Below the pieces are notes generated by a model. That model was not told the DNA's origin. It saw nothing but the letters and a program-made list of their open reading frames with translations, and made no database searches. From the IMG/VR virus record IMGVR_UViG_3300019776_000324, positions 248,001-312,000 of that record: a DNA stretch of 64,000 nt. One strand, 5' to 3'. Positions 44,734 through 64,000 of the stretch are shown here, piece by piece; position 1 is the stretch's first letter, and the number at the start of each line of letters is the position of its first letter. The translations under genes and the position numbers were made by a program.

Positions 44734-45669
44734 ATGAAATTAAGTCAACTTGTCTCTTTTAAAAACGAACTTGAAAAACTTTCAGCAATACCAGCACATC
44801 AAACAGCTGATCTGGAAGTTAAAAAAATTACACATTTGGTTGAATCGTTTCCAACAACAGCTTCTCAATTTGATAAATTTGAACAGGCTAGACTTTCTAT
44901 TACAGAAAAATTTGTTGAACTCGAATCTCAACTTGATGAATTAAAGCAATCGATTAAGAAACAAATTGAAGATGCTGAGCGTCCTTGGTTTGCTGAAAGT
45001 TATCGTTTGTACGAGAAGGAGATGGTCTTTGAATCAGTTGACTACATTTTAAATCGTCAACCTGCTATATTAGATGAAACCAACGAGTTCTATAAAACTC
45101 GTATCACAAGATATACAAACTGGAAATATCCAGCTATGATTATTCGTCCTGGACTAGAAACACATAGCAACTATATGGTTGACTGCGATCCATTATATCT
45201 AGTTGATGAACAATACGATTTATTAACTCCGGTTATAAATCAACACAGCGAAGTTTACCAAAAAAGATTGCGCCCTTATGTTATCAACGAAAGACAGGAT
45301 GGCGAAATACTTACTCGTTTGCCCAACAACCAATTTGGATTAATACTTGCTTATAACTTTTTTAATTTTAGACCGTTAGAAGTTATTCGAAAATATCTTA
45401 CTGAACTTTATGAAAAATTAAGAACAGGCGGAGTATTGATCATGACCATAAATGACTGTGATCGGGACAAAGGTGTAATGCTAGTAGAACAACATTTTGC
45501 TTGTTATACTCCTGGAAACATGATCATCGATCTGGCAAAGAGTATCGGGTATGAAGTAGAGTTTGTTTGGGACGACCAAGGACCATCTACCTGGATCGAA
45601 TTCCGCAAACCGGGCGAGTTGATTAGTCTTAGAGGCGGTCAAACTTTGGCAACAATTGTACCAAAATAA
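44734..45669 (+). CDS. Coiled-coil plus class I SAM-methyltransferase-like fold protein
   Basis: LP.NQFG.I..YNFF ... L..LY.KLR.GG.L.M pattern; canonical GxGxG absent. Confidence 0.5.
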   Translation: MKLSQLVSFKNELEKLSAIPAHQTADLEVKKITHLVESFPTTASQFDKFEQARLSITEKFVELESQLDELKQSIKKQIEDAERPWFAESYRLYEKEMVFESVDYILNRQPAILDETNEFYKTRITRYTNWKYPAMIIRPGLETHSNYMVDCDPLYLVDEQYDLLTPVINQHSEVYQKRLRPYVINERQDGEILTRLPNNQFGLILAYNFFNFRPLEVIRKYLTELYEKLRTGGVLIMTINDCDRDKGVMLVEQHFACYTPGNMIIDLAKSIGYEVEFVWDDQGPSTWIEFRKPGELISLRGGQTLATIVPK

Positions 45670-45728
45670 ATCAAAAACAGTTGCAAAATCTAAATAAACC
45701 AGTTATAATCAACAACAAGGAGAATTAC

Positions 45729-46451
45729 ATGAGAGATCACTTATTAGACTTAGTAGAACACACGCACGACTTAGGTTGCATTGACCTAGTTAAAATTACA
45801 GGAACTGCCCAAGAGACAGATATCTTTGGTATTGCCGAAGATCGTAGCGTTATTGTAGAAGGCAAGTATGCTGGCCCAGTGGGAGAATTTGTTGGCTTAT
45901 TTGGTATGCCAAACTTGGCAAAACTTAAGGTATTGTTAAACTTGCAAGAGTACAAAGAAGATGCCAAACTCAGTATCACTAACAAAGCTGATGGCACATT
46001 AGATGGCATCAACTTTGAAAACAAATCAGGCGACTTTAAAAACAACTATCGTTTCATGACAGCGGCTGCAGTTAACGAAAAGGCTAAGACAGCTAAGATG
46101 CGCCCAGTTACATGGCAAGTTGAGTTTACTCCTACTGTAGGATCAATCCAGCGTTTAAAAATGCAAGCACAGGCCAATGCCGAGGAACCAACATTCCAAG
46201 TTAGCACTGATGGTAGTGATTTAAAATTTGCATTTGGTGATCATTCAACTCACAGTGGTAACTTTGTATTCCAATCTGGTGTAGGCGGACAACTCAAACG
46301 AGCATGGTCATATCCAATTGCTCATGTCATTAGTATTTTAAATTTAACTGGTGACAAGACTATGCGTTTCAGTGATGACGGTGTTGCAGAGATTACTGTT
46401 GATTCTGGCTTGGCTGTTTATAGTTACAAGATTCCAGCGCAGTCTAAATAA
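45729..46451 (+). CDS. Sliding clamp (gp45/PCNA-like)
   Basis: About 240 aa, alpha/beta repeat, near PolB; C-terminal M.FSD.G...I.VDSG...Y.Y.IP; AAGGAG RBS; dual TTGCAA-17-TATAAT / TAAATA promoter. Confidence 0.7.
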   Translation: MRDHLLDLVEHTHDLGCIDLVKITGTAQETDIFGIAEDRSVIVEGKYAGPVGEFVGLFGMPNLAKLKVLLNLQEYKEDAKLSITNKADGTLDGINFENKSGDFKNNYRFMTAAAVNEKAKTAKMRPVTWQVEFTPTVGSIQRLKMQAQANAEEPTFQVSTDGSDLKFAFGDHSTHSGNFVFQSGVGGQLKRAWSYPIAHVISILNLTGDKTMRFSDDGVAEITVDSGLAVYSYKIPAQSK

Positions 46452-46454
46452 TCA

Positions 46455-47075
46455 ATGGGGGCTCCTTATACTATCCTGGATCACATTCAACTTGACTGTG
46501 ATTCAGCTACTGACATTGTTGTTGAAATTGGTAGCGAAAATGGAGAGGGGAGCAGTCGATGGTTATATCAGTGGTCTAGTAACCGTGATGTAAAATTTTA
46601 TAGTATAGATGTAGAGCACAGTGAAAGAGAAATAAGTTATCCAGAAATACCTTGGGTAGTATCGGAATCTGGATCATTGTGGTGTAAAAACATATTACCA
46701 ACTCTAAATAAAGCTATTAAAGTATTATACTTAGATAATTTTGATTACATGTACAACACTAACAACCCATCGGTATTGGAACAGTATGCTCGTCAAGTAA
46801 CCTTGTATGCGCAACGAGGAGTAGTTATGAATAATCAAAATTGCATGGAAGAACATCGATTACAAGTTGAATATTGTTTACCGTACATGGCAGAACAATC
46901 TGTAATTATAATGGATGATACTTATTATGACCCAGCATTAGAATTTCAACCAGCAAACGAACTTCCACAATGGTATGGTAAATGTGCTACTGCTATGCCA
47001 CTAATGATCGAAGCTGGATATTCTATAATTAGAGACCAAGAACACAATATAAATTATGCCATTAAATCAAGATAA
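46455..47075 (+). CDS. Class I SAM-dependent methyltransferase-like protein
   Basis: IVVEIGS..G.GS, FYSID, LYLD, IIMDDT. Confidence 0.65.
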   Translation: MGAPYTILDHIQLDCDSATDIVVEIGSENGEGSSRWLYQWSSNRDVKFYSIDVEHSEREISYPEIPWVVSESGSLWCKNILPTLNKAIKVLYLDNFDYMYNTNNPSVLEQYARQVTLYAQRGVVMNNQNCMEEHRLQVEYCLPYMAEQSVIIMDDTYYDPALEFQPANELPQWYGKCATAMPLMIEAGYSIIRDQEHNINYAIKSR

Positions 47076-48693
47076 CTTAACAGCCAAACAAAACGATTAC
47101 GCTGTATTCTTACCAGCTATCAGTGGCTTCTATGCTACTTTTGTCGGTAAACAACGAGATCCAGTAAATGGACCTTATGTAGATCCAGCTCGCTTGCCAG
47201 CTGGCATTCCGGACATGGAAATGCTTAACTGGCTTAATCCACAGAAAGGTATGTTTCCGTACAAGTGGTCTTTGTACTCAGGCGGACATGCTAACTTAGA
47301 TCTTAACAAACAAGACTGGTCCGAAGACATGGTTCGCAATCGCGATCCGGGTTCAGTTATCCTTGGCGACTCGGGTGGATTCCAGATTGCTAAAGGCTTG
47401 TGGGAAGGTGACTGGAAGGCTAACAGTGGTTGTCCTAAAGCGCAGAAGAAGCGTGATGCTGTACTTAAATGGTTAGATGGTGTTGCTGACTATGGCATGA
47501 TTCTTGATATTCCAACTTGGGTTATCCACGATAAGAAAGCCAGTGCCGCTTGTCAAATTACCACACTTCAAGAAGCTGTGGACGCTACCAAGTACAACAA
47601 CGACTACTTTATGAAGCATCGCAAAGGTGTTAAGAATGGTGGTGCCAAGTTCTTAAATGTTTTACAAGGTGCTAATCATGCTGACGCAGATCGTTGGTAT
47701 GAAACAATGAAACACTATTGTGATCCTAAAGTATATCCAGACACACATTTTAATGGCTGGTCCATGGGTGGTCAGAACATGTGTGATGTACACTTGGTAC
47801 TTCGTCGGTTGGTAGCACTTAGACACGATGGCTTGCTACAAGAAGGTGTTCACGATTGGATGCACTTCTTGGGCACAAGCAAACTAGAGTGGGCAGTATT
47901 ATTAACAGACATTCAACGAGCTGTTCGCAAATATGTTAATCCTGCATTTACTATTAGTTTTGACTGCGCTAGTCCATTCTTAGCCACAGCTAACGGACAA
48001 GTATATCATCATATTGACTTGCCACACAATGACAAGTGGTGTTATCGAATGAGTCCTATTGTGGACGATAAGAAATATGCCACAGACACTCGTCCATATG
48101 GTCCTACAGTAGTTCAAGAAGGCTATGTTGATCACTTTGATGAAAGTCCAATCAGCCGAGAGCTTAAGATGAAAGACATTTGCATCTATAAAGCAGGTGT
48201 TCGTAAAACTGATGCTGAACTAAACGGAGAAACATTTGATCCCAACAACATGAATCATTTCCATGTTGCTCCAGACTTAAACAAAATTGGTAAGAATGGC
48301 AAGACATCATGGGATAGTTTCAGTTATGCATTGTTAATGGGCCATAATGTTTGGATGCACTTGGAAGCAGTACAACGAGCCAACCGTGAATACGATGCTG
48401 GATCTTGGCCCAAGATGATGTGGAACGAAAACGGTGACCATGCCCGCTTTAAAGACATTGTGGATGCTATCTTTGCCACATCTGATCGTGCAGAAGCTGA
48501 AGCTATCATTGAACACTATGATCGCTATTGGATGGACATTGTTGGTACTCGTGGATTCAAAGGCAAGAAAGCCAAGAACGCACACAGTCAGTTTAATGCC
48601 TTGTTTGAAGTTGATGACAATGACGGAGTCGACGGCGACGAAGTGGAATTTGATGAGTCAAAACTGGATCACTTGGGAGACCAAATTGTTTAA
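47056..48693 (+). CDS. TGT-fold guanine transglycosylase (DpdA/Tgt-like)
   Basis: DSGGFQ, MILD, VLQG, SMGG, HFLG, SFDCASP, HN motifs colinear with tRNA-guanine transglycosylase. Confidence 0.8.
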   Translation: MPLNQDNLTAKQNDYAVFLPAISGFYATFVGKQRDPVNGPYVDPARLPAGIPDMEMLNWLNPQKGMFPYKWSLYSGGHANLDLNKQDWSEDMVRNRDPGSVILGDSGGFQIAKGLWEGDWKANSGCPKAQKKRDAVLKWLDGVADYGMILDIPTWVIHDKKASAACQITTLQEAVDATKYNNDYFMKHRKGVKNGGAKFLNVLQGANHADADRWYETMKHYCDPKVYPDTHFNGWSMGGQNMCDVHLVLRRLVALRHDGLLQEGVHDWMHFLGTSKLEWAVLLTDIQRAVRKYVNPAFTISFDCASPFLATANGQVYHHIDLPHNDKWCYRMSPIVDDKKYATDTRPYGPTVVQEGYVDHFDESPISRELKMKDICIYKAGVRKTDAELNGETFDPNNMNHFHVAPDLNKIGKNGKTSWDSFSYALLMGHNVWMHLEAVQRANREYDAGSWPKMMWNENGDHARFKDIVDAIFATSDRAEAEAIIEHYDRYWMDIVGTRGFKGKKAKNAHSQFNALFEVDDNDGVDGDEVEFDESKLDHLGDQIV

Positions 48694-49048
48694 TCCAATT
48701 TTTATTCCGTTGGTGTTGTTGTTTATTAAACATTGGTATGTTGATTTTGTCAATCAAACACAGGACGAAATTGACAGCAAAGGTACCTACGGTGGACTGG
48801 ATGGCATGTCACACAGTGCCAAACACGGATTAGGAACTATATTTGTATTTTTATTAGTAGGATTAGATCCAGCACTATCTGTAACACTAGGTGCAATTGA
48901 TATGGTTGTACACTATCACATCGATTGGATCAAAATGCGGTTTGGTACTCGTGATGTTGCTACTAAGGAATTTTGGAACCAATTAGGGTTAGATCAGTTA
49001 GCACACGCTCTAACCTATATTGGACTTGTTTGGTTATTATGGATATAA
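48686..49048 (+). CDS. DUF3307-like membrane protein
   Basis: H..VDF..Q, H..KH, HYHID..K, G.DQ..H; start estimated. Confidence 0.7.
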   Translation: MFNPIFIPLVLLFIKHWYVDFVNQTQDEIDSKGTYGGLDGMSHSAKHGLGTIFVFLLVGLDPALSVTLGAIDMVVHYHIDWIKMRFGTRDVATKEFWNQLGLDQLAHALTYIGLVWLLWI

Positions 49049-49050
49049 AA

Positions 49051-49257
49051 ATGATTGATAAATTACAGCACAGACTCAACCACTTAGAAAACGATCATGC
49101 TGCACTTAACAAGCGTATTGACGGAATGGAATCAACTGGTGTCTTTGAAGATGCTACCTTAGAGGTTTTGAAGAAGCAAAGGTTGCATTTGAAGGACGAA
49201 ATCTCTAAAATAAAACTTCAACTTGCATACGAAGCTGGACAACAGGAAAACGATTAA
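49051..49257 (+). CDS. DUF465/YdcH-like coiled-coil protein
   Basis: L...H..L...I ... LKKQRL.LKDEI. Confidence 0.7.
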   Translation: MIDKLQHRLNHLENDHAALNKRIDGMESTGVFEDATLEVLKKQRLHLKDEISKIKLQLAYEAGQQEND

Positions 49258-49790
49258 TGATTAGAGATGGGCACGATGATGTAAGTTTCTTTGTAGGAAC
49301 TGAAGTAGAACACACTCCTGCATTTGGACAAATTACATTATTTGTAGTAGGCTTACAGTCTATAGCAGATATTAAGAACGCACTTAAGACACACCGTGCT
49401 CTAGGCGGATACCTTGTTACCCATATATATTTTGGTGCTAACCAAAGTTTTCCTAACCCAGAATATAGTGATGCTCCTACCTGGCGTGATTGGGAAGGAA
49501 TGATTAATACATTCTTGCAAGACGGATACTTATGCACACTTGATATTGATGTAAAGTGTGTAGAAGGCCTGCTTGAATCTCCGTTGGTGGAATACCACAA
49601 CTTTATTCCAATGATTTCTATTAAACTCCCTTATATTAACCAACTTGGATACAATGCAACTATTAAACTTGATGACAAAGATTTTAAAGCAACCAACCCG
49701 GGCGTCTGGTGCCACTCGCTACACAGCTTACAAAAGCGCGAGGTGTTTACTGACTGGTCTAAATACACAAAGGACGAAGTAATTAAATGA
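49257..49790 (+). CDS. Hypothetical protein in the deazaguanine cluster
   Basis: 177-aa ORF coupled to the T-fold gene; HIYFGANQSF, TNPGVWCH. Confidence 0.7.
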   Translation: MIRDGHDDVSFFVGTEVEHTPAFGQITLFVVGLQSIADIKNALKTHRALGGYLVTHIYFGANQSFPNPEYSDAPTWRDWEGMINTFLQDGYLCTLDIDVKCVEGLLESPLVEYHNFIPMISIKLPYINQLGYNATIKLDDKDFKATNPGVWCHSLHSLQKREVFTDWSKYTKDEVIK

Positions 49791-50251
49791 TACAAGAACA
49801 ACGAGAAACAATAGAGAGAATTAAATCCGCAGCCAATCGTAAGATATGGGTTACTTTCCAGCGAGAAGGTATTCACTGCTATCCTGCGGCAGCAACAGAT
49901 CCTGCGTTAAATACTAACGATGAATACAATGTTGCGTTCCTTGCTAGCCCTCACCGTCATATCTTTCACTTTAGGGTGTCAATCAATGTCTTCCACAATG
50001 ACCGAGACATTGAGTTCATCCAGTTCAAACGCTGGCTCGAGAACTTATACAGTGGGACCGGTCCCTATAATGAAAATCGAGTTTTAGAACTCAACTACAA
50101 GTCCTGCGAAATGATTGCAGACGACTTGTACTTACAAATTGCAGGCCGCTATCCTGGTCGTGCTGTAGAAATCGAAGTGTCCGAAGACGGCGAGAACGGA
50201 TGCTTGATTAGTTATAACCTTACTCGTCCAACACAATCAATTGTAATTTAA
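49787..50251 (+). CDS. QueD-paralog T-fold protein (DpdL-like)
   Basis: GIH ... LASPHRHIF (LxxxHRHxF rather than CxxxHGH), IEF, SCE.IA, V.EDGENG. Confidence 0.7.
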   Translation: MIQEQRETIERIKSAANRKIWVTFQREGIHCYPAAATDPALNTNDEYNVAFLASPHRHIFHFRVSINVFHNDRDIEFIQFKRWLENLYSGTGPYNENRVLELNYKSCEMIADDLYLQIAGRYPGRAVEIEVSEDGENGCLISYNLTRPTQSIVI

Positions 50252-50263
50252 AAAGGAAATAAA

Positions 50264-50491
50264 ATGGGAAAGCCACAACATCGTGTAAACCCTAGAGCTT
50301 TGCAAGCATTGGAAGATTTGTCAAACTATTTGGAATTCTGTGTAGACTACGGTTACAGATATCGCGAAGAAGATTTGTATAACTTCAAAGCGTATGCTTG
50401 GCAACAGTACAACAAGTTTAGCCAGGGTAAAAATGCCAAGAACATGTGGGATGAAGATTCACGCAGATTCTCAGGATATCGCCGTGCGTAA
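50264..50491 (+). CDS. Hypothetical protein
   Basis: AGGA RBS; DL..YL.FC..YGY.Y.E.DLY. Confidence 0.65.
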   Translation: MGKPQHRVNPRALQALEDLSNYLEFCVDYGYRYREEDLYNFKAYAWQQYNKFSQGKNAKNMWDEDSRRFSGYRRA

Positions 50492-54779: not shown

Positions 54780-54798
54780 AAACAACACTTTTTACCGT

Positions 54799-54828: not shown

Positions 54829-54859
54829 ACTAGTATTGTTAATTAATCTAGGTTATACG

Positions 54860-57274: not shown

Positions 57275-57275
57275 A

Positions 57276-57458: not shown

Positions 57459-57464
57459 TAGTCC

Positions 57465-57530: not shown

Positions 57531-57536
57531 ATAATC

Positions 57537-57674: not shown

Positions 57675-58181
57675 ATGAACTACACCGGATCAAGACCTTA
57701 CAAATATACAAGTACTAAAGAATATCACGATGCATTTCCTTGCGCTTATCGTCAATGGAGAGCAGATAGTCACTGCAACTTGATTCATGGCTACTCATTT
57801 AGCATGAAGTTTTACTTTGGCACAGACGACTTAGATGTGCGTAACTGGGCTGCTGACTACGGCGGACTCAAAGAACTCAAAGGTATCCTTGAAAGTCAAT
57901 TTGATCATACCTTACTAGTAGCAGAAGATGATCCTGAACTAGAAACATACAAGTTATTACAAGAAAAGAATCTTGCTAAACTAACTATACTACCTAAGCT
58001 AGGTTGCGAAGGTCTAGCAGATCAATTGTACAAGTTTGTAAATGGTGTTTATATTCCAGACATGTGGGGTCAATCAGAAGCAGATCGCTTGTGGTGCTAT
58101 CGTGTGGAAGTTCGCGAAACAATGTCTAACATGGCATATCGCGAAGGACATCGTGAATGGAATGAAGATCTCTTCGAATAA
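57675..58181 (+). CDS. queD: 6-carboxy-5,6,7,8-tetrahydropterin synthase
   Basis: HCNLIHGY (CxxxHG), D.G.LK.LK, FDH.LL, GCE.LA, VEVRET. Confidence 0.88.
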   Translation: MNYTGSRPYKYTSTKEYHDAFPCAYRQWRADSHCNLIHGYSFSMKFYFGTDDLDVRNWAADYGGLKELKGILESQFDHTLLVAEDDPELETYKLLQEKNLAKLTILPKLGCEGLADQLYKFVNGVYIPDMWGQSEADRLWCYRVEVRETMSNMAYREGHREWNEDLFE

Positions 58182-58443
58182 AGTTAACGAAATCCTTGAC
58201 ATACTTCAGGAGGAGTGTGGAGAGGTTATTGTTGCTATCAGCAAGTGTCGTCGCTTTGGTATGGATAACTCCTACAAAGACGGCGGCACACAACGCGAAC
58301 ATTTAATCCAAGAACTTGGCGATGTTACCTTGTTGATCGAATTACTTCACGCACATCAAGTTTTTACTGAACAAGAATTACATCAAGCACAAGTAAGAAA
58401 AAGTCAAAAGTTAGTCAAGTGGTCAAAAATCTATGAAGAATAG
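58162..58443 (+). CDS. MazG-like NTP pyrophosphohydrolase
   Basis: LQEECGEVI.A.SK..RFG ... L..ELGDV. Confidence 0.8.
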   Translation: MKISSNKVNEILDILQEECGEVIVAISKCRRFGMDNSYKDGGTQREHLIQELGDVTLLIELLHAHQVFTEQELHQAQVRKSQKLVKWSKIYEE

Positions 58444-58471
58444 AAATTTATTTTGACTAATAATATACGCA

Positions 58472-58479
58472 TATAAATA
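58472..58479 (+). promoter_or_regulatory. T4 consensus late promoter TATAAATA
   Basis: Exact 8-mer, 8 nt before ATG 58488. Confidence 0.75.
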
Positions 58480-58487
58480 TTCGCACT

Positions 58488-59306
58488 ATGTCAAATGAAT
58501 ACAAAATATCTATTTTATTGCCCACACGAGGGCGCACAAAAGCACTGGATCGAAGCCTAATAGGTTTATTAGAAAAAGCCTCGGACCTCAGCAGTATCCA
58601 GTTACTGTTAGGATTGGATTCCGACGACTCTATAGGAGTTGAACATTTTCAAAATGAACTACAACCTAAATTAGATGACATGGGCATTGATTACACTGCC
58701 ATGTTGTTTAGTCCAATGGGTTATGGTCGCCTGAATGAATACATTAACAAACTAGCTGAAAATTCTTCTGCTGATTGGTTATTCTTTTGGAATGACGATG
58801 CAATCATGGAAACCACGGATTGGGATCTAGAGATTACCAAGCACACTGGCGAATTTAAATTATTAGCTGTACATACTCACAATGATCATCCATACAGCAT
58901 TTTCCCAATCGTACCTAAAGAGTGGTTGGATGTCATTGGTCATTTAAGTTTACACTCAATGACTGATGCTTGGTTGAGCCAAATTGCATACTGTGTGGAT
59001 ATTTGGGAACGAATTGATATTGATGTATTACACGACCGTGCAGACTTAACTGGCAACAATCAAGATGCTACCTACAAACAAAGAGAACTGCTCGAAGGCA
59101 ATCCTAATAATCCTAGAGACTTCCATCACCCTGCACAGACCATGTTGCGTATGAAAGAATGCGATATACTAGACAACTATCTTAAAAGCATCGGAAAAGG
59201 TAGCGATTGGTGGGATCGTGTTAAATCAGGAGATCAAGATCCTTGGGACCGATTGAAAGAAAACGACATTAATAAACAAATGGTTCAGTTCCAATTAAAA
59301 AAATAA
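58488..59306 (+). CDS. GT2-family (GT-A) glycosyltransferase
   Basis: ISILLPTRGR, LD.DD, WNDD, D.WL. Confidence 0.8.
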   Translation: MSNEYKISILLPTRGRTKALDRSLIGLLEKASDLSSIQLLLGLDSDDSIGVEHFQNELQPKLDDMGIDYTAMLFSPMGYGRLNEYINKLAENSSADWLFFWNDDAIMETTDWDLEITKHTGEFKLLAVHTHNDHPYSIFPIVPKEWLDVIGHLSLHSMTDAWLSQIAYCVDIWERIDIDVLHDRADLTGNNQDATYKQRELLEGNPNNPRDFHHPAQTMLRMKECDILDNYLKSIGKGSDWWDRVKSGDQDPWDRLKENDINKQMVQFQLKK

Positions 59307-59309
59307 CTT

Positions 59310-60359
59310 ATGACTAACAAACAAAAAACTATACTTGTAACAGGCGGTGCTGGATTTATCGGACACCATATGATTCGTCGTTTACTCAAGCACGAAGAAT
59401 ATCGAATTATCTCAATGGATCGACTAGACTTTTCTGGCAATCTTAATCGCTTGCACGAACTAAGTCAAGAGTTTGGCACCGATGCAATGAGTCGTTTGCG
59501 TGTGATTTTTCACGATCTTCGTGCAGAAATTAATCCACAACTAGCACATCAGATTGGTCCTGTGGATTACATTATTCATATGGCCGCTGGTAGTCATGTC
59601 ACACGATCAATTGAGAATCCCATGTTGTTTGTACAGGACAATGTGGTTGGTACTTGTAACCTATTAGAATATGCTCGTAAGTATTTGCCCAACTTGGAAA
59701 AGTTTATTAACTTTGGCACCGACGAAGTGTTTGGATCGGCTCCAGAAGGTGTAGAATACAAAGAATACGATCGTTACAACAGTCGTAGTCCTTACAGTGC
59801 TACTAAAGCTGGCGCAGAAGAATTATGTGTATGCTACGAAAATACCTATAACATGCCTATCTACTGTACACACACAATGAATGTGTTTGGTGAGCGTCAA
59901 TTACCGGAGAAGTTTATTGGTATTGCTATGCGCAAGATACTTGCTGGGGAAGAAGTTACTATCCACTGTGATGAAGAAACAGGAACCAAGAGTGGATTGC
60001 GTCACTGGGTTCATGCTGCCGATGTTGCTGATGCTACTATGTTTATCATGGACTTGCCTCATAAAGGCTTTCCACTTGCTGATGACTTTGGCGGTGCTAC
60101 ATGTCCTAAGTTCAACATTGTAGGGCAACAAGAAGTTTCTAACTTTGATGTAGCACAAAAGATTGCCGACATCCTGGGCAAGGAATTAAAGCACACAATG
60201 ATTGGCTACGATACACAACGCCCAGGGCATGATTTCCGTTATGCACTCAGCGGAGAGTATATGAAGAAGTTAGGTTGGGAACCCAAGTACGACTTTGAAA
60301 CACGCATTGAACAAATGGTTCTTTGGACATTGAAGAATGATCGCTGGTTAAAAATATGA
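59310..60359 (+). CDS. rmlB: dTDP-glucose 4,6-dehydratase-like (RmlB)
   Basis: VTGGAGFIG, HMAA.SHV.RSI, TDEVFG, SPYSATKA, Q.PEKF, RPGHD.RY. Confidence 0.9.
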   Translation: MTNKQKTILVTGGAGFIGHHMIRRLLKHEEYRIISMDRLDFSGNLNRLHELSQEFGTDAMSRLRVIFHDLRAEINPQLAHQIGPVDYIIHMAAGSHVTRSIENPMLFVQDNVVGTCNLLEYARKYLPNLEKFINFGTDEVFGSAPEGVEYKEYDRYNSRSPYSATKAGAEELCVCYENTYNMPIYCTHTMNVFGERQLPEKFIGIAMRKILAGEEVTIHCDEETGTKSGLRHWVHAADVADATMFIMDLPHKGFPLADDFGGATCPKFNIVGQQEVSNFDVAQKIADILGKELKHTMIGYDTQRPGHDFRYALSGEYMKKLGWEPKYDFETRIEQMVLWTLKNDRWLKI

Positions 60360-61567
60360 AACATGTAACAGAAAATACACATTGCCTAGCGTGTGGGTCA
60401 GGCGACATACACACAGCACTAGATTTAGGCAAGCAACCTTTAGCAAACAGTTATAAAGATTCAGCAGACGAGCCAGAAGCACGATACCCACTGGGTGTTA
60501 GGCTATGTCGTAAGTGCTATCACTTGCAACTGAGTCACACTGTGGATCCCGAAATCATTTATAAAAACTACCTGTATGCTACTGGTACTAATCAAACTAT
60601 CAAAGATTACTCAGCGTGGTTTGCTAACTTTTGTTTAGAGTCATGTAATCGTGCCGGTACAGTGTTAGACATTGGTTGTAATGATGGTACTCAACTTGAT
60701 TACTTCAAAGCACTTGGTGTCAAGACATATGGAATTGATCCTGCGGAAAATTTGCACTCTAGAAGTGGTGCCAATCACAATGTAGTATGCGATTTCTTTG
60801 GCCCGCAGGCTGTGGAAAAATTAAACACGGTCTACTATGATCTTATCATAGCACAAAATGTATGTGCTCATAATCCAGATCCACGGGCATTTTTAGAATC
60901 ATGCTATCAATTAATGGCCGATCATACTGTGTTGTTTGTACAGACTAGCCAGGCTGACATGGTTCTACACAATGAATTTGATACTATCTATCACGAACAT
61001 GTAAACTTTTTCAATGCTAATAGCATGAACGAACTGGCCAAACGAGTTGGTTTGCATCTGATTGATGTTATTAAAGCTCCTATTCATGGCAACAGTTATA
61101 TTTTTATTTTAAGTAAACAGCCGTTTAACAAAAATCGTATTAGCAACATTATCGGACTTGAAGCGGCCTATGGACTGCTTGATGTAGAAACATATATCAA
61201 GTGGGAAAAGTATGTGCAGTCACTTGTTCGTAAATTAAAAGCACAGATTAATGCTTATCGCAAAGATGGTTACGCTATTGCAGGTTATGGTGCTGCGGCC
61301 AAGGGTAATACCTTGCTGAATTTTACTGATATCAAACTTGATTTTATCATTGACGACAATCCGCTCAAGCAAGGAAAGTTTACGCCAGGTACTAGTTGTC
61401 CTATTGTTAGTATTGATCATCTTACAAAGTTTAAAAAGAAAGACAAGATTTTGTTTATGCCCTTGGCTTGGAACTTCTTTCCAGAGATCAAGTCAAAAAT
61501 TCAATCTGCTAGAAGCAATCCTAACGATCTCTTTATTCGTTATTTTCCACAGGTTGATGTACAATAA
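60356..61567 (+). CDS. NDP-hexose C-methyltransferase
   Basis: N-terminal CxxC...CxxC Zn domain, LDIGCNDG, FDTIYHEH, YGAAAKGNT.LN, LAWNF. Confidence 0.88.
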   Translation: MKHVTENTHCLACGSGDIHTALDLGKQPLANSYKDSADEPEARYPLGVRLCRKCYHLQLSHTVDPEIIYKNYLYATGTNQTIKDYSAWFANFCLESCNRAGTVLDIGCNDGTQLDYFKALGVKTYGIDPAENLHSRSGANHNVVCDFFGPQAVEKLNTVYYDLIIAQNVCAHNPDPRAFLESCYQLMADHTVLFVQTSQADMVLHNEFDTIYHEHVNFFNANSMNELAKRVGLHLIDVIKAPIHGNSYIFILSKQPFNKNRISNIIGLEAAYGLLDVETYIKWEKYVQSLVRKLKAQINAYRKDGYAIAGYGAAAKGNTLLNFTDIKLDFIIDDNPLKQGKFTPGTSCPIVSIDHLTKFKKKDKILFMPLAWNFFPEIKSKIQSARSNPNDLFIRYFPQVDVQ

Positions 61568-62334
61568 TGAAAAATTATCTAATCAAAGGCCTGCATCGTA
61601 TTGGTAGTACTCAGTGGTGGCCTGGGCGTGATCGTGCCGACGAAGGTGACTTATTTTATTACTATACAAAGATGGCCGAACTAAGCGAAGCCAGCTTCTT
61701 TCACAACTTACAAGGCGATTGGGAATACATCAAGCTAGAGTCTGAAGCTACCGATGTAAACCATGTGTTCCGTCAGCAATTTGCTGCCATTTGGGATATT
61801 TGGAAATCAGAACCTTGTAACATTTATTACTGCGGCAGTGATGTACAAGTGTTAAAACCTGTGGAAGTGTTTGGTCGATACAAGCATTTCTTGATGTTTA
61901 ATTATACCGATCCAAAGAGTTTGGATGAGCATGCTCATTTCTTGAACGCTGACATACGCTATTATCCTGCCGAAATGGATCGAGACATGTTTGAACAAGC
62001 AACTCGAGATGTTGCTCAAGCTACAGAATGGAACAATGATCAAAAGCTGTATAATCGCATGGTGTGGTCGCAAGGGCTCGCTCCAGACGAAGTAATCGAT
62101 CCAACAATGGCCTATCAGGGTCCTTGGTTGCCAGGGCCGCAAGAAGCCAGAGACTTTACAGATAAGTGGAACGGATGCCGATTAGAAGATGCCAACATTG
62201 TACACTGGCATGGTAGCCGAAATGCCAATGGTAAATTACAACTTATGCAATCGGTAAATGATCAATTGGGCATACCAGCTGTTCCGGTTAATCCTAGACC
62301 AACAAAGACCTTAGATATCTCACATTATCCTTGA
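61567..62334 (+). CDS. Putative nucleotide-diphospho-sugar transferase
   Basis: Y.GSD, N.D.RY, DQ..YN, IVHWHGSR; lies in the sugar operon. Confidence 0.5.
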   Translation: MKNYLIKGLHRIGSTQWWPGRDRADEGDLFYYYTKMAELSEASFFHNLQGDWEYIKLESEATDVNHVFRQQFAAIWDIWKSEPCNIYYCGSDVQVLKPVEVFGRYKHFLMFNYTDPKSLDEHAHFLNADIRYYPAEMDRDMFEQATRDVAQATEWNNDQKLYNRMVWSQGLAPDEVIDPTMAYQGPWLPGPQEARDFTDKWNGCRLEDANIVHWHGSRNANGKLQLMQSVNDQLGIPAVPVNPRPTKTLDISHYP

Positions 62335-62359
62335 CAAGACTGCTAATAAGTGTTAAAAT
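62331..62359 (+). promoter_or_regulatory. sigma70-type promoter TTGACA-17-TAAAAT
   Basis: Consensus -35; ATG 62366 is 6 nt downstream. Confidence 0.7.
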
Positions 62360-62365
62360 AGTAAT

Positions 62366-62902
62366 ATGAAAAAAGTATATTACACTTGGCAGGATGTTGA
62401 AAATCAAACACAAGAAATTCTGCGTCAACTACAGCGTGATGCATGGATGCCCGATTATGTTGTAGGGCTTACTAGAGGCGGACTTGTTCCAGCTAATCTT
62501 ATTAGCCAATACTTAGAAGTGCCAATGGAAACACTCAAAGTAAGCCTGCGTGACGATGCTAGCCAACCCGAATCAAACTTATGGATGGCCGAAGATGCAT
62601 ACGGTCATGTAGATTATGATCCAATGTCAGGTGGTGATGGGCGTCAAAAGATTCTTATTGTAGACGACATCAATGATTCGGGTGCTACACTTAATTGGAT
62701 TAAACAAGACTGGATGAGTAGTTGTATGCCTGGCGATCTAGAACGCTGGAATCATGTATGGAACGATAATGTTCGTGTTGCTGTACTAGTTGATAACGAA
62801 GCCAGCGCCAGTGAATTAAATGTTAGATATTCAGCCATTGACCTAAATAAAGCTGAAGAAGATTGTTGGATTGTGTTTCCTTGGGAAGATTGGTGGAAGT
62901 GA
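62366..62902 (+). CDS. Purine phosphoribosyltransferase (Gpt-like)
   Basis: VVGLTRGGLVPA, LIVDDINDSGAT PRPP loop, WIVFPWE. Confidence 0.9.
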   Translation: MKKVYYTWQDVENQTQEILRQLQRDAWMPDYVVGLTRGGLVPANLISQYLEVPMETLKVSLRDDASQPESNLWMAEDAYGHVDYDPMSGGDGRQKILIVDDINDSGATLNWIKQDWMSSCMPGDLERWNHVWNDNVRVAVLVDNEASASELNVRYSAIDLNKAEEDCWIVFPWEDWWK

Positions 62903-63579
62903 AAAGTATAGTATCTTTTGGCGATAGCTTTGTATTTGGCAGTGAACTAGCTGACAACAACGATGGCTCCAAGGCCTGGCCTGCGCTGGTGGCCAAAGAA
63001 CTAGGATATTCTTATAATACATCTGCGGTTCCAGGGTGCGGCAATGATCATATTGCTAGACAAATTTATACATGGTTTTCTAATAACTCACCTGAAAATA
63101 CTCTAGCAGTGATCAACTGGACTTGGATGAGTCGTTGGGACTTTTATATTGTTGAGCACGAAACATGGATTACCTTAGGACCAACTTGTGTTCCAGAAAA
63201 ACTCAAAGATTTAGTTGATCGTACACAAGCCGAAGACATGATTGATTTTTATAAGACTCGAGCCAATAGTAGCTTGCTATGGAACAAGTTTAGAAACTTA
63301 CAAACCATTTGGGCTGTGCAACAATACATGAATCACAAGGGTATCAAGTCTGTACAAACTTACATGGACTATGAGTTGTTTGATCAAACCTTTCACGCAC
63401 CGGATTATATTAAAGAACTACAACAATTAGTGTTACCAAAATTACAATTATTTGATGATAAAAACTTTGTTGATTGGTCGCATGAACATGAATATCCTGT
63501 TACAATACAAGGGTGGCATCCGCTGGAACAAGCACATCAAGCGGCAGCAGAATATTGGAAAGATATTTACAAAATCTAA
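62899..63579 (+). CDS. SGNH/GDSL-hydrolase-like protein
   Basis: FGDSF, PG.GN, WT..SR.D, WHP...AH; GTG start. Confidence 0.55.
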   Translation: MKSIVSFGDSFVFGSELADNNDGSKAWPALVAKELGYSYNTSAVPGCGNDHIARQIYTWFSNNSPENTLAVINWTWMSRWDFYIVEHETWITLGPTCVPEKLKDLVDRTQAEDMIDFYKTRANSSLLWNKFRNLQTIWAVQQYMNHKGIKSVQTYMDYELFDQTFHAPDYIKELQQLVLPKLQLFDDKNFVDWSHEHEYPVTIQGWHPLEQAHQAAAEYWKDIYKI

Positions 63580-63587
63580 ATACTATT

Positions 63588-63794
63588 ATGAACATATACT
63601 ATAGAGAATCAACATTGTTAGAACAAATAAATGATGCTATTAGCGACTGCGCTACTAGTAAAAAGCACATTGACTATTTTGAATTAACCAGCGAAGAACT
63701 TGCTTCTAATTGGACCAGTTTTGATAGAACCACAAATAATGGTATCGATGTTAGATATTCCTATAAAGGTATTCCTATAAAGGTTAAAGAATGA
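63588..63794 (+). CDS. Hypothetical protein
   Basis: TAAATA 5 nt before ATG; ATGA overlap with queE. Confidence 0.6.
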
Positions 63795-64000
63795 AAATTA
63801 AAGTATCAGAATTATTTTATAGTTTACAAGGCGAAGGTCGCTTTGTTGGTGTGCCAAGTGTGTTCTTGCGTACATATGGATGTAACTTTAAGTGTGCAGG
63901 CTTTGGTTGCAAGCCAGGCGAAAAGTCAACAGGCGCAGATGAAGTTGCTAAAGAAGTCAGCAAGTATGATACATTCTTAAGTTTGCCATTGGTTGAAACT
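63791..64000 (+). CDS. queE: 7-carboxy-7-deazaguanine synthase QueE (radical SAM), truncated by window end
   Basis: [32 protein letters not shown]. Confidence 0.85.

What the first reader, a model, noticed from the sequence alone, without database searches (positions are those of the whole stretch)
44734..64000. 7-deazaguanine DNA-modification pathway joined to the replisome genes and interleaved with glycosyl- and methyltransferases
Seen: PolB, MTase-like, clamp, MTase-like, TGT-fold enzyme, DpdL-like T-fold protein, GT-B glycosyltransferase, GalE, DegT-like, FolE, then QueD, MazG, a purine PRTase and QueE. No QueC, QueF or Gat-QueC in this window. Established: FolE-QueD-QueE make CDG from GTP, and DpdA/TGT-fold enzymes exchange deazaguanines into phage DNA to block restriction. 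Inference: this phage makes a CDG- or 7-deazaguanine-derived base that may be further glycosylated or methylated, a hypermodification I do not know to be described.
Basis: partly seen in the sequence, partly recalled or inferred. Interest (0 to 1): 0.85.

Follow-up and report, generated by a model that had tools for sequence, protein, structure and literature searches.

The report
Deazaguanine DNA-modification genes with a sugar-adding partner
A giant environmental phage carries the known gene set for replacing guanine in its DNA with 7-deazaguanine, and a sugar-transferring enzyme sits beside these genes in many unrelated phages, which suggests an undescribed sugar-decorated form of the base that can be tested in phages already in culture.

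Summary
Window 44734-64000 lies in a 344-kb IMG/VR jumbo-phage contig. It encodes FolE, QueD and QueE (which make CDG), a DpdL with the published LxxxHRHxF signature, and a 545-aa protein that I show is a TGT-fold enzyme related to DpdA3. No QueC or QueF was found in the window or in the 9 kb after it. This is the Cellulophaga phiST type of module, whose product in phiST is 2'-deoxy-7-deazaguanine replacing all dG, so the core is a known kind.

The new part is the GT4 (GT-B) glycosyltransferase at 50487-51689. Its family lies next to dpdL or dpdA3 in PA5oct, ACP17, Phosso, Xanthomonas X1/BUDD, BCSR5 and cyanophage BUCT-ZZ01. It also lies next to dpdL in 49 of 57 diverse IMG/VR loci (49 of 50 with an intact flank). 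The published DpdL/DpdA3 paper does not mention it.

GalE and a shortened DegT-like protein are translationally coupled to this GT. A second GT with a variable NDP-sugar cassette, and a purine PRTase beside QueE, complete the locus.

The methylation link is weak, the "clamp" call is unverified, and the chemistry of any sugar adduct is inferred only. Mass spectrometry of DNA from the cultured phages would settle it.

The parts
42075..44732 (+). Family-B DNA polymerase, immediately upstream of the finding. The same PolB-then-deazaguanine order occurs in PA5oct, Phosso, ACP17 and X1.
   Evidence: Pfam DNA_pol_B 1.6e-39; neighbourhoods
44734..45669 (+). 311-aa protein with an N-terminal coiled coil and a weakly class-I SAM-methyltransferase-like C-terminal half. 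Conserved in the clade (77 of 80 loci); substrate unknown.
   Evidence: No hit for the window copy; 14 of 23 family members hit Methyltransf_11, best 3.9e-5; synteny
45681..46451 (+). Function is not established.
   Evidence: phrog_12062, unknown function. Homologs are PA5oct gp170, annotated as a virion structural protein by MS, and a Phosso protein annotated as a sliding clamp. No PDB profile hit. hhalign against a T4-type clamp gives probability 0.1%.
46455..47075 (+). 206-aa weakly MTase-like protein. It is a strain-specific insert, not part of the conserved module.
   Evidence: Methyltransf_24 at 1.4e-3, below cutoff. Present at this position in 0 of 80 relatives. Found at other positions in 10 of 80 second-set loci.
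47056..48693 (+). DpdA3-like DNA-guanine transglycosylase, a long and divergent form. Family-invariant residues are D105, S106, G108 (GDSGGFQ), H270 and D303.
   Evidence: AF2 pLDDT 88.5. Foldseek top nine hits are TGT or ArcTGT. hhalign against DpdA3 of ACP17, X1, BUCT-ZZ01 and phiST: probability 97.1%, E 5.4e-11. Family HMM also hits those DpdA3 proteins. 36% identical to PA5oct gp168. 944 clusters at 50% identity.
48680..49257 (+). Two small accessory genes: a DUF3307 membrane protein and a DUF465 protein. Both are variable among relatives.
   Evidence: Pfam; DUF3307 in 1 of 80 loci and DUF465 in 21 of 80
49257..49790 (+). 177-aa conserved protein of unknown fold. It always follows the dpdA-like gene in this clade, and its ACP17 homolog (gp122) directly precedes dpdA3.
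   Evidence: Present in 79 of 80 loci; ACP17 and PA5oct homologs. AF2 pLDDT 88.2, with no significant PDB or BFVD structural match. Found in 24 of 57 diverse GT loci.
49787..50251 (+). DpdL, a QueD-paralogous protein proposed in the literature to be a CDG decarboxylase.
   Evidence: LxxxHRHxF motif conserved across 23 family members; defined in PMC10516641. tblastn against ACP17 8e-37 and phiST 2e-8.
50264..50491 (+). Conserved 75-aa protein of unknown function between dpdL and the GT.
   Evidence: Present in 61 of 80 loci
50487..51689 (+). GT4-family (GT-B) glycosyltransferase, the cross-lineage partner of dpdL and dpdA3.
   Evidence: PF00534 in 9 of 13 members, best 8e-12. PDB profile best hit WlaC, 2.3e-4. 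Homologs adjacent to dpdL or dpdA3 in seven phage groups. 49 of 57 IMG/VR loci have dpdL on the same strand, median gap 219 bp.
51686..52636 (+). UDP-glucose 4-epimerase GalE. Its start overlaps the GT stop by 4 bp.
   Evidence: TIGR01179, 302.9 bits, above cutoff 262.3; junctions
52633..53223 (+). Shortened DegT/sugar-aminotransferase-like protein (196 aa against about 370). It keeps the PLP lysine K113 and D89. Its start overlaps the GalE stop by 4 bp.
   Evidence: Pfam DegT 2.3e-8, N-terminal part only. PDB profile hits to sugar aminotransferases in two segments that include the PLP-lysine motif, best 1.4e-9.
53294..54091 (+). GTP cyclohydrolase I (FolE) with an N-terminal extension of about 78 aa.
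   Evidence: PF01227 8.8e-41; NCBIfam FolE 7e-41
54836..57274 (+). 812-aa FG-GAP repeat protein. It is a variable insert and probably unrelated to the pathway.
   Evidence: Pfam FG-GAP_3 1.3e-15; found in 13-15 of 80 loci in each set
57675..58181 (+). QueD (6-carboxytetrahydropterin synthase). The phage-type motif is CxxxHGY.
   Evidence: PF01242 6.2e-13; aligns with phiST and ACP17 QueD
58042..58443 (+). MazG-like pyrophosphohydrolase. The match is weak and the gene is variable among relatives.
   Evidence: PF03819 1e-5; present in 6 of 80 loci
58488..59306 (+). Second putative glycosyltransferase, probably GT-A-like, with invariant D103 and D104. It follows QueD wherever the flank is present, and is specific to this clade.
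   Evidence: phrog_14945 'glycosyltransferase' 6.4e-10; invariant columns. No Pfam or PDB hit. No hit in the phage collection. Synteny.
59310..62334 (+). Variable NDP-sugar tailoring cassette: a dTDP-glucose-4,6-dehydratase-like gene, an NDP-hexose C-methyltransferase, and a 255-aa gene of unknown function.
   Evidence: TIGR01181 243 bits, below cutoff. Methyltransf_13/14/23. The cassette content differs among the 80 relatives, from none to dehydratase, C-MTase, epimerase or UGDH combinations.
62366..62902 (+). Purine (xanthine/guanine-type) phosphoribosyltransferase. It lies next to QueE here, in BUCT-ZZ01 and in PA5oct.
   Evidence: PF00156 7e-16; NCBIfam XPRT 6.6e-13, below cutoff. Found in 19 of 57 diverse GT loci.
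63791..64000 (+). QueE (CDG synthase, radical SAM), cut by the window end. The full gene is 285 aa in the source contig (L091:11426-12280).
   Evidence: NCBIfam QueE models. L091 is identical to the window over the 11,635 bases they share.

Best explanation
This is a phiST-type (DpdA3/DpdL) 7-deazaguanine DNA-modification module in the replication region of a 344-kb environmental jumbo phage that is distantly related to PA5oct and Phosso.

Supported by homology here:
- FolE, QueD and QueE convert GTP to 7-carboxy-7-deazaguanine (CDG).
- No QueC is present, so the pathway stops before preQ0.
- DpdL and a DpdA3-like TGT-fold enzyme are present.

Inferred from the literature:
- DpdL turns CDG into 7-deazaguanine.
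- The transglycosylase swaps this base for guanine in phage DNA after replication, which blocks restriction enzymes.

Inferred from conserved gene neighbourhood across many lineages:
- The GT4 glycosyltransferase at 50487-51689 works in the same pathway. GalE would supply UDP-hexose, with a possible contribution from the shortened DegT-like enzyme.
- It would add a sugar to the deazapurine, either to the free base before insertion (as HuiG does on the free deazapurine core of huimycin) or to the base once in DNA. The result would be a glycosylated 7-deazaguanine not yet described.

More speculative:
- The PRTase probably recycles the guanine released by the exchange back to GMP and GTP, the pathway's own substrate.
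- The second GT and the variable sugar cassette may extend or vary the glycan, or may serve an unrelated surface-polysaccharide role.
For: Core pathway:
- Family hits for FolE, QueD and QueE.
- DpdL motif and homology.
- TGT fold and DpdA3 profile match.
- No QueC or QueF motif in the window. The PP-loop protein downstream is NadE-type (nadE 177 bits, QueC 27 bits).
- phiST, with the same gene set, has dDG replacing all dG (PMC10516641).
- PA5oct DNA resists restriction enzymes with G in their sites (PMC12191111).

GT coupling:
- Conserved order dpdA - g177 - dpdL - GT - galE - degT-like - folE in the 80 closest IMG/VR relatives.
- GT homologs sit between or beside dpdA3 and dpdL in ACP17, PA5oct, Phosso, X1/BUDD, BCSR5 and BUCT-ZZ01.
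- In the 50,697-record phage collection, 18 of the 23 GT-positive records are also DpdL-positive (Fisher p = 1.5e-57, not corrected for lineage).
- In 57 diverse IMG/VR GT loci, dpdL is present in 49, always on the same strand, with a median gap of 219 bp. Seven of the eight without it are cut at the contig edge. 27 of the 30 GT clusters at 60% identity have dpdL.
- Identities to the window proteins are discordant between the GT and the DpdL/FolE genes, yet adjacency is kept: BUCT-ZZ01 GT 67% against DpdL 35%, and Phosso DpdL 61% against GT 22%.
- 4-bp overlaps join g177 to dpdL and join GT, galE and the degT-like gene.
- The NAR 2023 authors could not reconstitute dDG in E. coli from dpdA plus dpdL of ACP17 and noted that other enzymes may be needed.

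Chemical precedent: GT-mediated glycosylation of a 7-deazapurine base in huimycin, and GT plus MTase tailoring in that BGC family (PMC7439116; bioRxiv 10.64898/2026.04.15.718813).
Against: - 7-Deazaguanine has no hydroxyl, amine or carboxyl group at C7 to accept a sugar.
- phiST and Rhizobium phage RHph_I1_18 carry dpdL without this GT nearby. phiST DNA contains plain dDG, so the GT is not needed for the core modification.
- A few clade members lack the GT (L099, L134, L137).
- No mass-spectrometry data exist for any GT-positive phage.
- DpdL's decarboxylase activity and DpdA3's activity are themselves unproven in vitro.
- One distant GT branch (the PhiXhv-15/Ep032 group) sits in an amino-sugar context with no deazaguanine genes.
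- One IMG/VR locus with full flanks (L206) has none.
- The GT proteins are acidic (pI 5.4-6.2) and show no obvious DNA-binding signature, although the DpdA-like protein is acidic too.
- Only the window plus 9 kb of a 344-kb genome was examined for QueC.
Confidence: 0.45

Rival explanations
1. The phage makes plain dDG, as phiST does, and the sugar genes do something else. The GTs and NDP-sugar enzymes would glycosylate virion proteins or remodel host surface polysaccharide, and they sit here only because this early DNA-metabolism region collects accessory genes.
For: - phiST makes dDG with no GT.
- DG lacks an acceptor group at C7.
- The cassette between the second GT and the PRTase varies strongly among relatives, and also takes up an MTase, a MazG and an FG-GAP protein.
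- Iyer et al. 2021 read variable GT and sugar clusters in cyanophages and jumbo phages as surface-polysaccharide diversification (PMC7824862).
- The second GT has no homolog in the other DpdL phages.
Against: - This does not explain why one GT4 family lies within a median of 219 bp of dpdL, on the same strand, in 49 of 50 informative diverse loci and in six to seven cultured lineages with otherwise rearranged clusters.
- It does not explain why that family is almost absent from phages without dpdL: 5 of 23 records.
- Identities to the window proteins are discordant between the GT and the DpdL/FolE genes, yet the GT still lies next to dpdL.
Confidence: 0.3
2. The base enters DNA through the nucleotide pool, as in tubercidin biosynthesis. 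The PRTase would couple CDG or DG to PRPP, and kinases and ribonucleotide reductase would yield 7-deaza-dGTP. MazG-type enzymes would deplete dGTP, and the adjacent PolB would incorporate the analogue. The TGT-like enzyme would be auxiliary.
For: - The PRTase lies next to QueE in the window clade (80 of 80 loci anchored on it), in BUCT-ZZ01 and in PA5oct, and in 19 of 57 diverse loci.
- Tubercidin BGCs use a CDG core without QueC, plus a PF00156 PRTase and a decarboxylase.
- MazG-like genes lie in or near the clusters here and in phiST.
- Replacement is complete in DpdA3 phages, and dpdA plus dpdL failed in E. coli.
- The cluster abuts PolB in five lineages.
Against: - The PRTase is absent from the ACP17, X1, BCSR5 and phiST clusters.
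- Its best matches are ordinary xanthine/guanine PRTases, which fits simple salvage of excised guanine.
- A conserved TGT-fold enzyme with intact catalytic motifs is kept in all lineages.
- No UbiD-type decarboxylase or GMP-reductase-type gene turned up among the region's ORFs.
Confidence: 0.1
3. The cluster makes a soluble glycosylated 7-deazapurine, of the huimycin or dapiramicin type, used against the host or competing phages. It would not be a DNA modification.
For: The gene content parallels those BGCs: a deazapurine core, a GT4-type GT, a Methyltransf_11-like protein, and an RmlB-type dehydratase. The GT tracks the small-molecule-binding T-fold protein DpdL more tightly than it tracks dpdA.
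Against: - A DpdA3-like transglycosylase is conserved in the clusters: 43 of 57 diverse loci, despite limited flanks.
- PA5oct DNA behaves as G-modified.
- phiST DNA is fully dDG.
- There is no QueC, whereas the huimycin family uses preQ0.
Confidence: 0.07
4. The TGT-like enzyme modifies tRNA (queuosine- or archaeosine-type), not DNA.
For: The closest solved structures are tRNA-guanine transglycosylases.
Against: - There are no tRNA genes in the 64-kb window.
- The profile match is to DpdA3, the phage DNA-acting subfamily.
- No QueC, QueF, QueA or QueG was found to finish a tRNA base.
- DpdL-type clusters correlate with dDG in DNA.
- There was no match to the Pfam TGT model.
Confidence: 0.03

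Closest known systems
Cellulophaga phage phiST dDG system (DpdA3 + DpdL + FolE/QueD/QueE; Nucleic Acids Res 2023, PMC10516641)
   Same: - The same enzyme set without QueC.
- The DpdL signature LxxxHRHxF.
- A TGT-fold DpdA3-type protein.
- A MazG-like neighbour.
- A position next to the DNA polymerase.
   Different: - phiST has no GT, GalE, DegT-like gene, PRTase or g177.
- Its DpdA3 is 259 aa, against 545 aa here, and the two families share only about 17% identity at profile level.
- phiST has a P-loop protein (CGPG_00066) between dpdL and dpdA3 instead.
Pseudomonas jumbo phage PA5oct gp162-gp173 region, and Sinorhizobium phage Phosso
   Same: - Shared order PolB - 256-aa protein - dpdA-like (36% identity) - GT - dpdL - PRTase - QueE - FEN.
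- PA5oct DNA is reported to resist G-site restriction enzymes.
   Different: - Their GT is only about 22% identical to the window's.
- They have no GalE, DegT-like gene, second GT or sugar cassette. PA5oct has only a 172-aa SDR fragment.
- In PA5oct, QueD and the g177 homolog lie elsewhere in the genome. In Phosso, the dpdA-like gene lies elsewhere.
Acidovorax phage ACP17, Xanthomonas phages X1/BUDD, Burkholderia phage BCSR5 and Synechococcus phage BUCT-ZZ01 clusters
   Same: A GT4-family homolog lies between or beside dpdA3 and dpdL, with FolE and QueE close by (QueD also in ACP17, BCSR5 and BUCT-ZZ01). ACP17 also has the g177 homolog. BUCT-ZZ01 has the PRTase and a GT 67% identical to the window's.
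   Different: They carry the shorter classical DpdA3 (416-447 aa), have different gene orders, and belong to unrelated phage backbones (Busanvirus, T4-like Kyanoviridae).
T4-type DNA glucosylation (alpha- and beta-glucosyltransferases on 5-hydroxymethylcytosine)
   Same: A GT-B fold enzyme using a UDP-hexose is encoded with a base-replacement pathway to defeat restriction.
   Different: No sequence relationship was seen: the PDB profile hits are GT4 enzymes, not T4 AGT or BGT. The acceptor would be a purine analogue rather than hmC, and there are no hydroxymethylase genes here.
Huimycin/dapiramicin and tubercidin 7-deazapurine natural-product clusters
   Same: - FolE, QueD and QueE form the core.
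- A GT4-type GT and a SAM-MTase decorate the deazapurine (huimycin family).
- An RmlB-type deoxysugar step occurs (dapiramicin).
- A PRTase acts on a QueC-less CDG core (tubercidin).
   Different: - Those are actinomycete secondary-metabolite clusters with no transglycosylase.
- The huimycin family needs QueC (preQ0).
- Tubercidin uses a UbiD decarboxylase rather than a T-fold protein.
- Homology of the phage GT to HuiG was not tested.

Membership tests
DpdA3-type DNA-guanine transglycosylase (TGT superfamily) | TGT-type TIM-barrel fold | tested here: met
   AF2 model pLDDT 88.5, pTM 0.89. Foldseek PDB ranks 1-9 are all bacterial TGT or archaeosine TGT (E 2.4e-6 to 5.5e-4, probability 1.00), and the next hits are generic barrels at E >= 1e-2. 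TM-scores are modest (0.36 on the query, 0.50 on the target).
DpdA3-type DNA-guanine transglycosylase (TGT superfamily) | Catalytic DSGG aspartate and a second conserved aspartate | tested here: met
   GDSGGFQ at residues 104-110. D105, S106, G108, H270 and D303 are invariant in 88 homologs. These columns align with the DSGG, HxLG and SYDS motifs of DpdA3. Equating them with Z. mobilis TGT D102 and D280 rests on my recall of the TGT motifs.
DpdA3-type DNA-guanine transglycosylase (TGT superfamily) | Sequence-profile relationship to named DpdA3 proteins | tested here: met
   hhalign probability 97.1%, E 5.4e-11 over 277 columns. The family HMM hits ACP17 gp123 at 1.2e-9 and phiST CGPG_00065 at 5e-4 in a small database. 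Pairwise BLASTP is not significant, so this is a divergent long branch.
DpdA3-type DNA-guanine transglycosylase (TGT superfamily) | Exchanges guanine in DNA for a deazaguanine; complete replacement | not testable with these tools
   This needs biochemistry or nucleoside mass spectrometry. It is also unproven in vitro for any DpdA3.
DpdL (proposed CDG decarboxylase, QueD paralog) | Signature LxxxHRHxF replacing the CxxxHGH of QueD | tested here: met
   L52, H56, H58 and F60 are invariant and R57 is nearly invariant in 23 sequences, including phiST and ACP17 DpdL. The motif is defined in PMC10516641.
DpdL (proposed CDG decarboxylase, QueD paralog) | Homology to phiST CGPG_00067 and ACP17 gp125 | tested here: met
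   tblastn 2e-8 and 8e-37; blastp 2.5e-17 and 1.3e-46
DpdL (proposed CDG decarboxylase, QueD paralog) | T-fold (QueD/PTPS-like) structure | tested here: inconclusive
   No Pfam hit. hhalign against the phage QueD alignment matches only the C-terminal 40 columns (probability 75%, E 2.6e-5). No PDB profile hit. The published HHpred result for phiST DpdL was 99.9% to PF01242.
DpdL (proposed CDG decarboxylase, QueD paralog) | Occurs with DpdA, FolE, QueD and QueE but without QueC | tested here: met
   All are present in the window. No PP-loop QueC motif occurs in any frame. The downstream PP-loop gene is NadE-type. Only 73 kb of the 344-kb genome was seen.
CDG synthesis (FolE, QueD, QueE) | All three enzyme families present | tested here: met
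   FolE 8.8e-41 and PTPS 6.2e-13. QueE models match the full 285-aa protein, although scores are below the equivalog cutoffs. QueD carries CxxxHGY, like the phiST and ACP17 QueD proteins.
GT4 / GT-B glycosyltransferase | Glycos_transf_1 C-terminal domain | tested here: met
   The window copy scores 1.5e-4, below the gathering score. Nine of 13 family members hit PF00534, best 8e-12, and five hit Glyco_trans_1_4. The best PDB profile hits are GT4 enzymes such as WlaC, WbaZ and RfaG.
GT4 / GT-B glycosyltransferase | Acceptor is a deazaguanine, free or in DNA | not testable with these tools
   Only gene-neighbourhood evidence is available.
T4-type DNA glucosyltransferases (AGT/BGT) | Sequence relationship to T4 alpha- or beta-glucosyltransferase | tested here: not met
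   The profile search of all PDB chains returned only GT4-type enzymes and no T4 AGT or BGT.
   No Pfam hit. The PHROG family has unknown function. No PDB profile hit at E <= 0.1. hhalign against a T4-type phage clamp gives probability 0.1%. The only support is another annotator's label on the Phosso homolog. No structure was predicted.
Tubercidin-type nucleotide route | PRTase plus UbiD-family decarboxylase plus GMP-reductase-like enzyme | tested here: not met
   A PRTase is present. No UbiD or GMP-reductase family hit appeared among the ORFs of 42-64 kb or the 9 kb downstream.

The most novel reading that the evidence does not exclude
Phages that carry the dpdL-GT4 pair, including cultured PA5oct, ACP17, X1, BCSR5, Phosso and BUCT-ZZ01 as well as this very abundant environmental jumbo-phage clade, replace guanine with a glycosylated 7-deazaguanine. 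As far as I know, this would be the first sugar-bearing purine analogue in any DNA. The variable NDP-sugar cassette would diversify the sugar between strains, in an arms race with modification-dependent nucleases.
Probability: 0.3. Interest if true: 0.9.

Novelty: new variant of a known kind. Interest (0 to 1): 0.68.

Why it matters
Eight 7-deazaguanine derivatives are known in phage DNA, and none carries a sugar. All known glycosylated DNA bases are pyrimidine derivatives.

If the GT4 partner decorates the deazaguanine, this would be a new class of DNA hypermodification. It would be present in a therapeutic-candidate Pseudomonas phage (PA5oct) and in one of the most abundant jumbo-phage clades in metagenomes. 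The GT alone has at least 7,986 protein clusters at 90% identity, and the DpdA-like protein has 944 clusters at 50% identity.

It would also bear on an open problem: dDG could not be reconstituted from dpdA plus dpdL.

Even if the DNA carries plain dDG, three results stand:
- The long DpdA3-like family gets a fold-level annotation.
- PA5oct-type 'modified G' gets a concrete gene set.
- The GT and g177 families become named candidates for the missing steps.

The question can be answered quickly, because several of the phages are in culture.

Tried and rejected
- Near-identity DNA search of the 19-kb region against GenBank phages gave only a 138-bp epimerase match, so there is no close cultured relative.
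- Sequence-only detection of the TGT-like protein failed in Pfam, NCBIfam, PHROGs and PDB, both for the single sequence and for an 88-sequence profile. Structure prediction and profile-profile comparison were needed.
- g177 has a confident model but no significant match in PDB or BFVD. Its function is left unknown. phiST CGPG_00066 is not a homolog.
- The clamp hypothesis for 45681-46451 has no support.
- The second GT (58488-59306) has no Pfam or PDB hit and no hit in the phage collection.
- I first suspected that the PP-loop gene two genes after QueE was a missing QueC. It is NadE-type, and in relatives it usually occurs together with a UDP-glucose dehydrogenase (48 and 51 loci of about 77). 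This suits a uronic-acid amidation or NAD role better than CDG amidation.
- An alignment-based locus search with eight distant GTs found no usable conserved stretch. ACP17 gp124 alone found only itself. A three-sequence alignment worked.
- Promoter and terminator scans gave counts no different from shuffled sequence.
- Isoelectric points do not discriminate a DNA-binding GT.
- The supplements of the NAR 2023 paper and the 2024 MMBR review were not available.
- Neither the library searches I ran nor the papers I read gave a report of a glycosylated deazaguanine in DNA or of a GT linked to DpdL.

Full report
**What is there.** Window 42-64 kb is one + strand block of tightly packed genes, many joined by 4-bp start/stop overlaps. 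The order is:

- PolB (42075-44732)
- a 311-aa protein
- a 256-aa protein
- a 206-aa protein
- a 545-aa protein
- small DUF3307 and DUF465 genes
- a 177-aa protein (g177)
- a 154-aa protein
- a 75-aa protein
- a glycosyltransferase
- GalE
- a 196-aa DegT-like protein
- FolE
- two small genes
- an 812-aa FG-GAP protein
- QueD
- a MazG-like gene
- a second putative glycosyltransferase
- a 4,6-dehydratase-like gene
- an NDP-sugar C-methyltransferase
- a 255-aa gene of unknown function
- a purine PRTase
- an SGNH-like gene
- a 93-aa gene
- the first 70 codons of QueE

The window is identical over its last 11,635 bases to IMG/VR contig IMGVR_UViG_3300019776_000324 (344,244 bp). The host genome is therefore a jumbo phage, and I could read 9 kb past the window end. 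No close cultured relative exists. However, more than 600 IMG/VR stretches encode relatives of the 545-aa protein, on contigs up to 320 kb.

**The deazaguanine core.** FolE, QueD (PTPS family) and QueE (285 aa in the source contig) are supported by family models.

The 154-aa protein is DpdL. It carries L-ASP-HRH-I-F, the LxxxHRHxF signature that the 2023 Nucleic Acids Research paper uses to separate DpdL from QueD. That motif is conserved in 23 aligned family members, including phiST CGPG_00067 and ACP17 gp125. The window protein matches those two proteins directly.

The 545-aa protein gave no hit in Pfam, NCBIfam, PHROGs or the PDB, even as an 88-sequence profile. Three results show what it is:
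- It contains GDSGGFQ.
- An AlphaFold2 model built on 88 diverse homologs is confident (pLDDT 88.5), and its nine best PDB matches are all tRNA-guanine or archaeosine transglycosylases before a sharp drop to generic barrels.
- Its family profile aligns with the DpdA3 proteins of ACP17, X1, BUCT-ZZ01 and phiST at 97% probability (E 5e-11). The DSGG, HxLG and (F/Y)D(C/S) motif columns line up.

It is a long, divergent DpdA3-type enzyme, 36% identical to PA5oct gp168.

No QueC or QueF motif occurs in any frame of the window. The PP-loop gene two genes after QueE is NadE-type, not QueC. No tRNA gene is present.

This gene set is that of Cellulophaga phage phiST, whose DNA has 2'-deoxy-7-deazaguanine in place of every dG. 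The core is therefore a new member of a known kind. Note that the decarboxylase role of DpdL and the DNA activity of DpdA3 are proposals in the literature. They were not reconstituted in E. coli.

**The glycosyltransferase link.** The GT really starts at the GTG at 50487. Its family is GT4/GT-B: nine of 13 members hit PF00534 (best 8e-12), and the best PDB profile matches are GT4 enzymes. GalE is an equivalog-level match. The 196-aa protein is a shortened sugar-aminotransferase-like protein that keeps the PLP lysine. The GT, galE and the degT-like gene overlap by 4 bp each.

In the 80 closest relatives the order dpdA - g177 - dpdL - GT - galE - degT-like - folE - queD - GT2 is conserved. That alone could be shared ancestry, so I looked further out.
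- The nearest cultured homolog of the GT (67% identity) lies directly after dpdL in the T4-like cyanophage BUCT-ZZ01.
- More distant homologs (22-24% identity, full length, E 1e-9 to 1e-19) lie between dpdA3 and dpdL in ACP17 and PA5oct.
- Others lie directly after dpdL in Phosso, directly before dpdA3 in Xanthomonas X1/BUDD, and 2.8 kb from dpdL in BCSR5.
- In the 50,697-record phage collection, 23 records have this GT family and 29 have DpdL, and 18 have both (Fisher p = 1.5e-57, not corrected for lineage).
- The only GT-positive group without DpdL is a distant branch in an amino-sugar context.
- A search of IMG/VR seeded with the ACP17, PA5oct and Phosso GTs returned 57 diverse loci, forming 30 clusters at 60% identity. 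dpdL is present in 49 of them, always on the same strand, with a median gap of 219 bp. Seven of the eight exceptions have the GT within about 1 kb of the contig edge, so the flank where dpdL would lie is missing. Only one locus with full flanks lacks the pathway.
- Identities to the window proteins are discordant between genes. BUCT-ZZ01 has GT 67% but DpdL 35%. Phosso has DpdL 61% and FolE 62% but GT 22%. So the genes have been reassorted, yet the adjacency is kept.

This is strong neighbourhood evidence that the GT works with DpdL and DpdA3. The NAR 2023 text does not mention it. Neither my library searches nor the papers I read gave a report of a GT linked to DpdL or of a glycosylated deazaguanine in DNA. 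PA5oct DNA is reported to resist restriction enzymes with G in their sites, and its chemistry is undetermined.

**What the GT might do.** This part is inference. phiST and RHph_I1_18 have dpdL without the GT, and a few clade members lack it too. The GT is therefore an add-on rather than a requirement for dDG. 7-Deazaguanine has no C7 handle.

There is chemical precedent for glycosylating a deazapurine base. In huimycin, the GT HuiG puts GlcNAc on the free 7-deazapurine core alongside a SAM methyltransferase. The dapiramicin family adds an RmlB-derived deoxysugar. The GT tracks the small-molecule-binding DpdL even more tightly than dpdA. So it may act on the free base before insertion. Alternatively, it may act on the base already in DNA, as the T4 glucosyltransferases do on hmC.

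**Other parts.**
- The PRTase is next to QueE in every clade member anchored on it, in BUCT-ZZ01 and in PA5oct, and occurs in 19 of 57 diverse loci. The simplest role is recycling the guanine released by base exchange into GTP. A tubercidin-like role on CDG or DG is a rival.
- g177 follows dpdA in 79 of 80 relatives and precedes dpdA3 in ACP17. It gives a confident model with no structural match.
- The second GT follows QueD throughout the clade but is unknown elsewhere.
- Between the second GT and the PRTase lies a hot spot. Its content varies among relatives: nothing, dehydratase + C-MTase + g255, C-MTase + epimerase, UGDH, and others. A NadE-like plus UDP-glucose-dehydrogenase pair after QueE is present in about two thirds.
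- Such polymorphism fits either diversification of a DNA glycan or the surface-polysaccharide reading that Iyer et al. gave for variable sugar clusters in large phages.

**Methyltransferases and clamp.**
- The 206-aa 'MTase' is absent at this position from all 80 first-set relatives.
- The 403-aa enzyme is a sugar C-methyltransferase type.
- The conserved 311-aa protein is MTase-like only at family level.
- The 256-aa 'clamp' has no detectable similarity to known clamps. Its PA5oct homolog is annotated as a virion protein.
- Base methylation is therefore not supported.

**Verdict.** The pathway reading is right and matches a published system. The hypermodification idea is not proven, but its testable prediction, GT co-occurrence, holds far beyond the window's own clade. 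I rate it a new variant of a known kind. The main reading has about 0.45 confidence, and plain dDG with unrelated sugar genes is the chief rival at about 0.3.

Noticed in passing
L091:12541-14608 (source contig, about 0.8-2.8 kb past the window end): A NadE-type PP-loop amidoligase (250 aa; nadE 177 bits, QueC only 27 bits) is followed by a UDP-glucose-6-dehydrogenase-like gene. In relatives the two usually occur together (48 and 51 loci of about 77). They could form a uronic-acid amidation cassette, an NAD-supply function or, less likely, a CDG-to-ADG amidase.
   Followed up: partly
window 49257-49790; ACP17 gp122 (L002:6243-6725): A 177-aa family with a confident predicted structure has no PDB or BFVD match. 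It is tied to the dpdA-like gene in two unrelated phage groups and occurs in 24 of 57 diverse GT loci. It is a candidate missing component of the dDG pathway.
   Followed up: partly
window 59310-62334 and the equivalent position in L091-L170: There is a hyper-variable slot between the second GT and the PRTase. Different relatives carry different NDP-sugar tailoring genes there, and sometimes the 206-aa MTase-like gene or a MazG.
   Followed up: partly
L083:7010-8353 (Synechococcus phage BUCT-ZZ01): A second, distant GT-like gene (447 aa; GT family HMM 5.5e-4) lies directly upstream of dpdA3, so this cyanophage cluster has GTs on both sides of dpdA3-dpdL.
   Followed up: no
L085:8323-8802 (phiST CGPG_00066): The gene between dpdL and dpdA3 in phiST has a P-loop-like GxxxxGK[ST]-type motif (GEICSGKDT). 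It is not homologous to g177. It may be a kinase-like protein, which would bear on the nucleotide-pool hypothesis.
   Followed up: no
L001:12416-12931 (PA5oct gp164): A 172-aa fragment-sized SDR matches the N-terminal Rossmann half of the GalE and dehydratase families. It sits between dpdL and the PRTase.
   Followed up: no
window 57675-58181 and alignment A12: The QueD proteins of these phages, including phiST and ACP17, carry CxxxHGY rather than the canonical CxxxHGH.
   Followed up: no
window 26614-30849, 31394-33385, 20912-23191: Upstream of the finding are a 1411-aa protein with nucleotidyltransferase and amidoligase domains, a 663-aa protein with two GNAT domains, and a ClpB-like double-AAA ATPase. 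These may be other modification or conflict systems.
   Followed up: no
window 12035-13195 and 40936-41985: There are two further radical-SAM proteins. The second has a SPASM domain and lies just upstream of PolB.
   Followed up: no
window 2493-4712: A 739-aa protein has an Mtd_N (major tropism determinant N-terminal) domain, so it may be a tail fibre. I did not check for a diversity-generating retroelement.
   Followed up: no
L091:19698-20534: A DctP-type TRAP transporter solute-binding protein is encoded in the phage genome downstream of the module. tblastn found it in three further second-set loci (plus one on the minus strand).
   Followed up: no
L206 (IMGVR_UViG_3300046002_005803) and L087 (Xanthomonas phage PhiXhv-15): These are the only GT-family members with intact flanks and no deazaguanine genes. 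PhiXhv-15 has the GT next to GlmS-like and LmbE-deacetylase-like genes. They are useful outgroups for working out the acceptor.
   Followed up: partly
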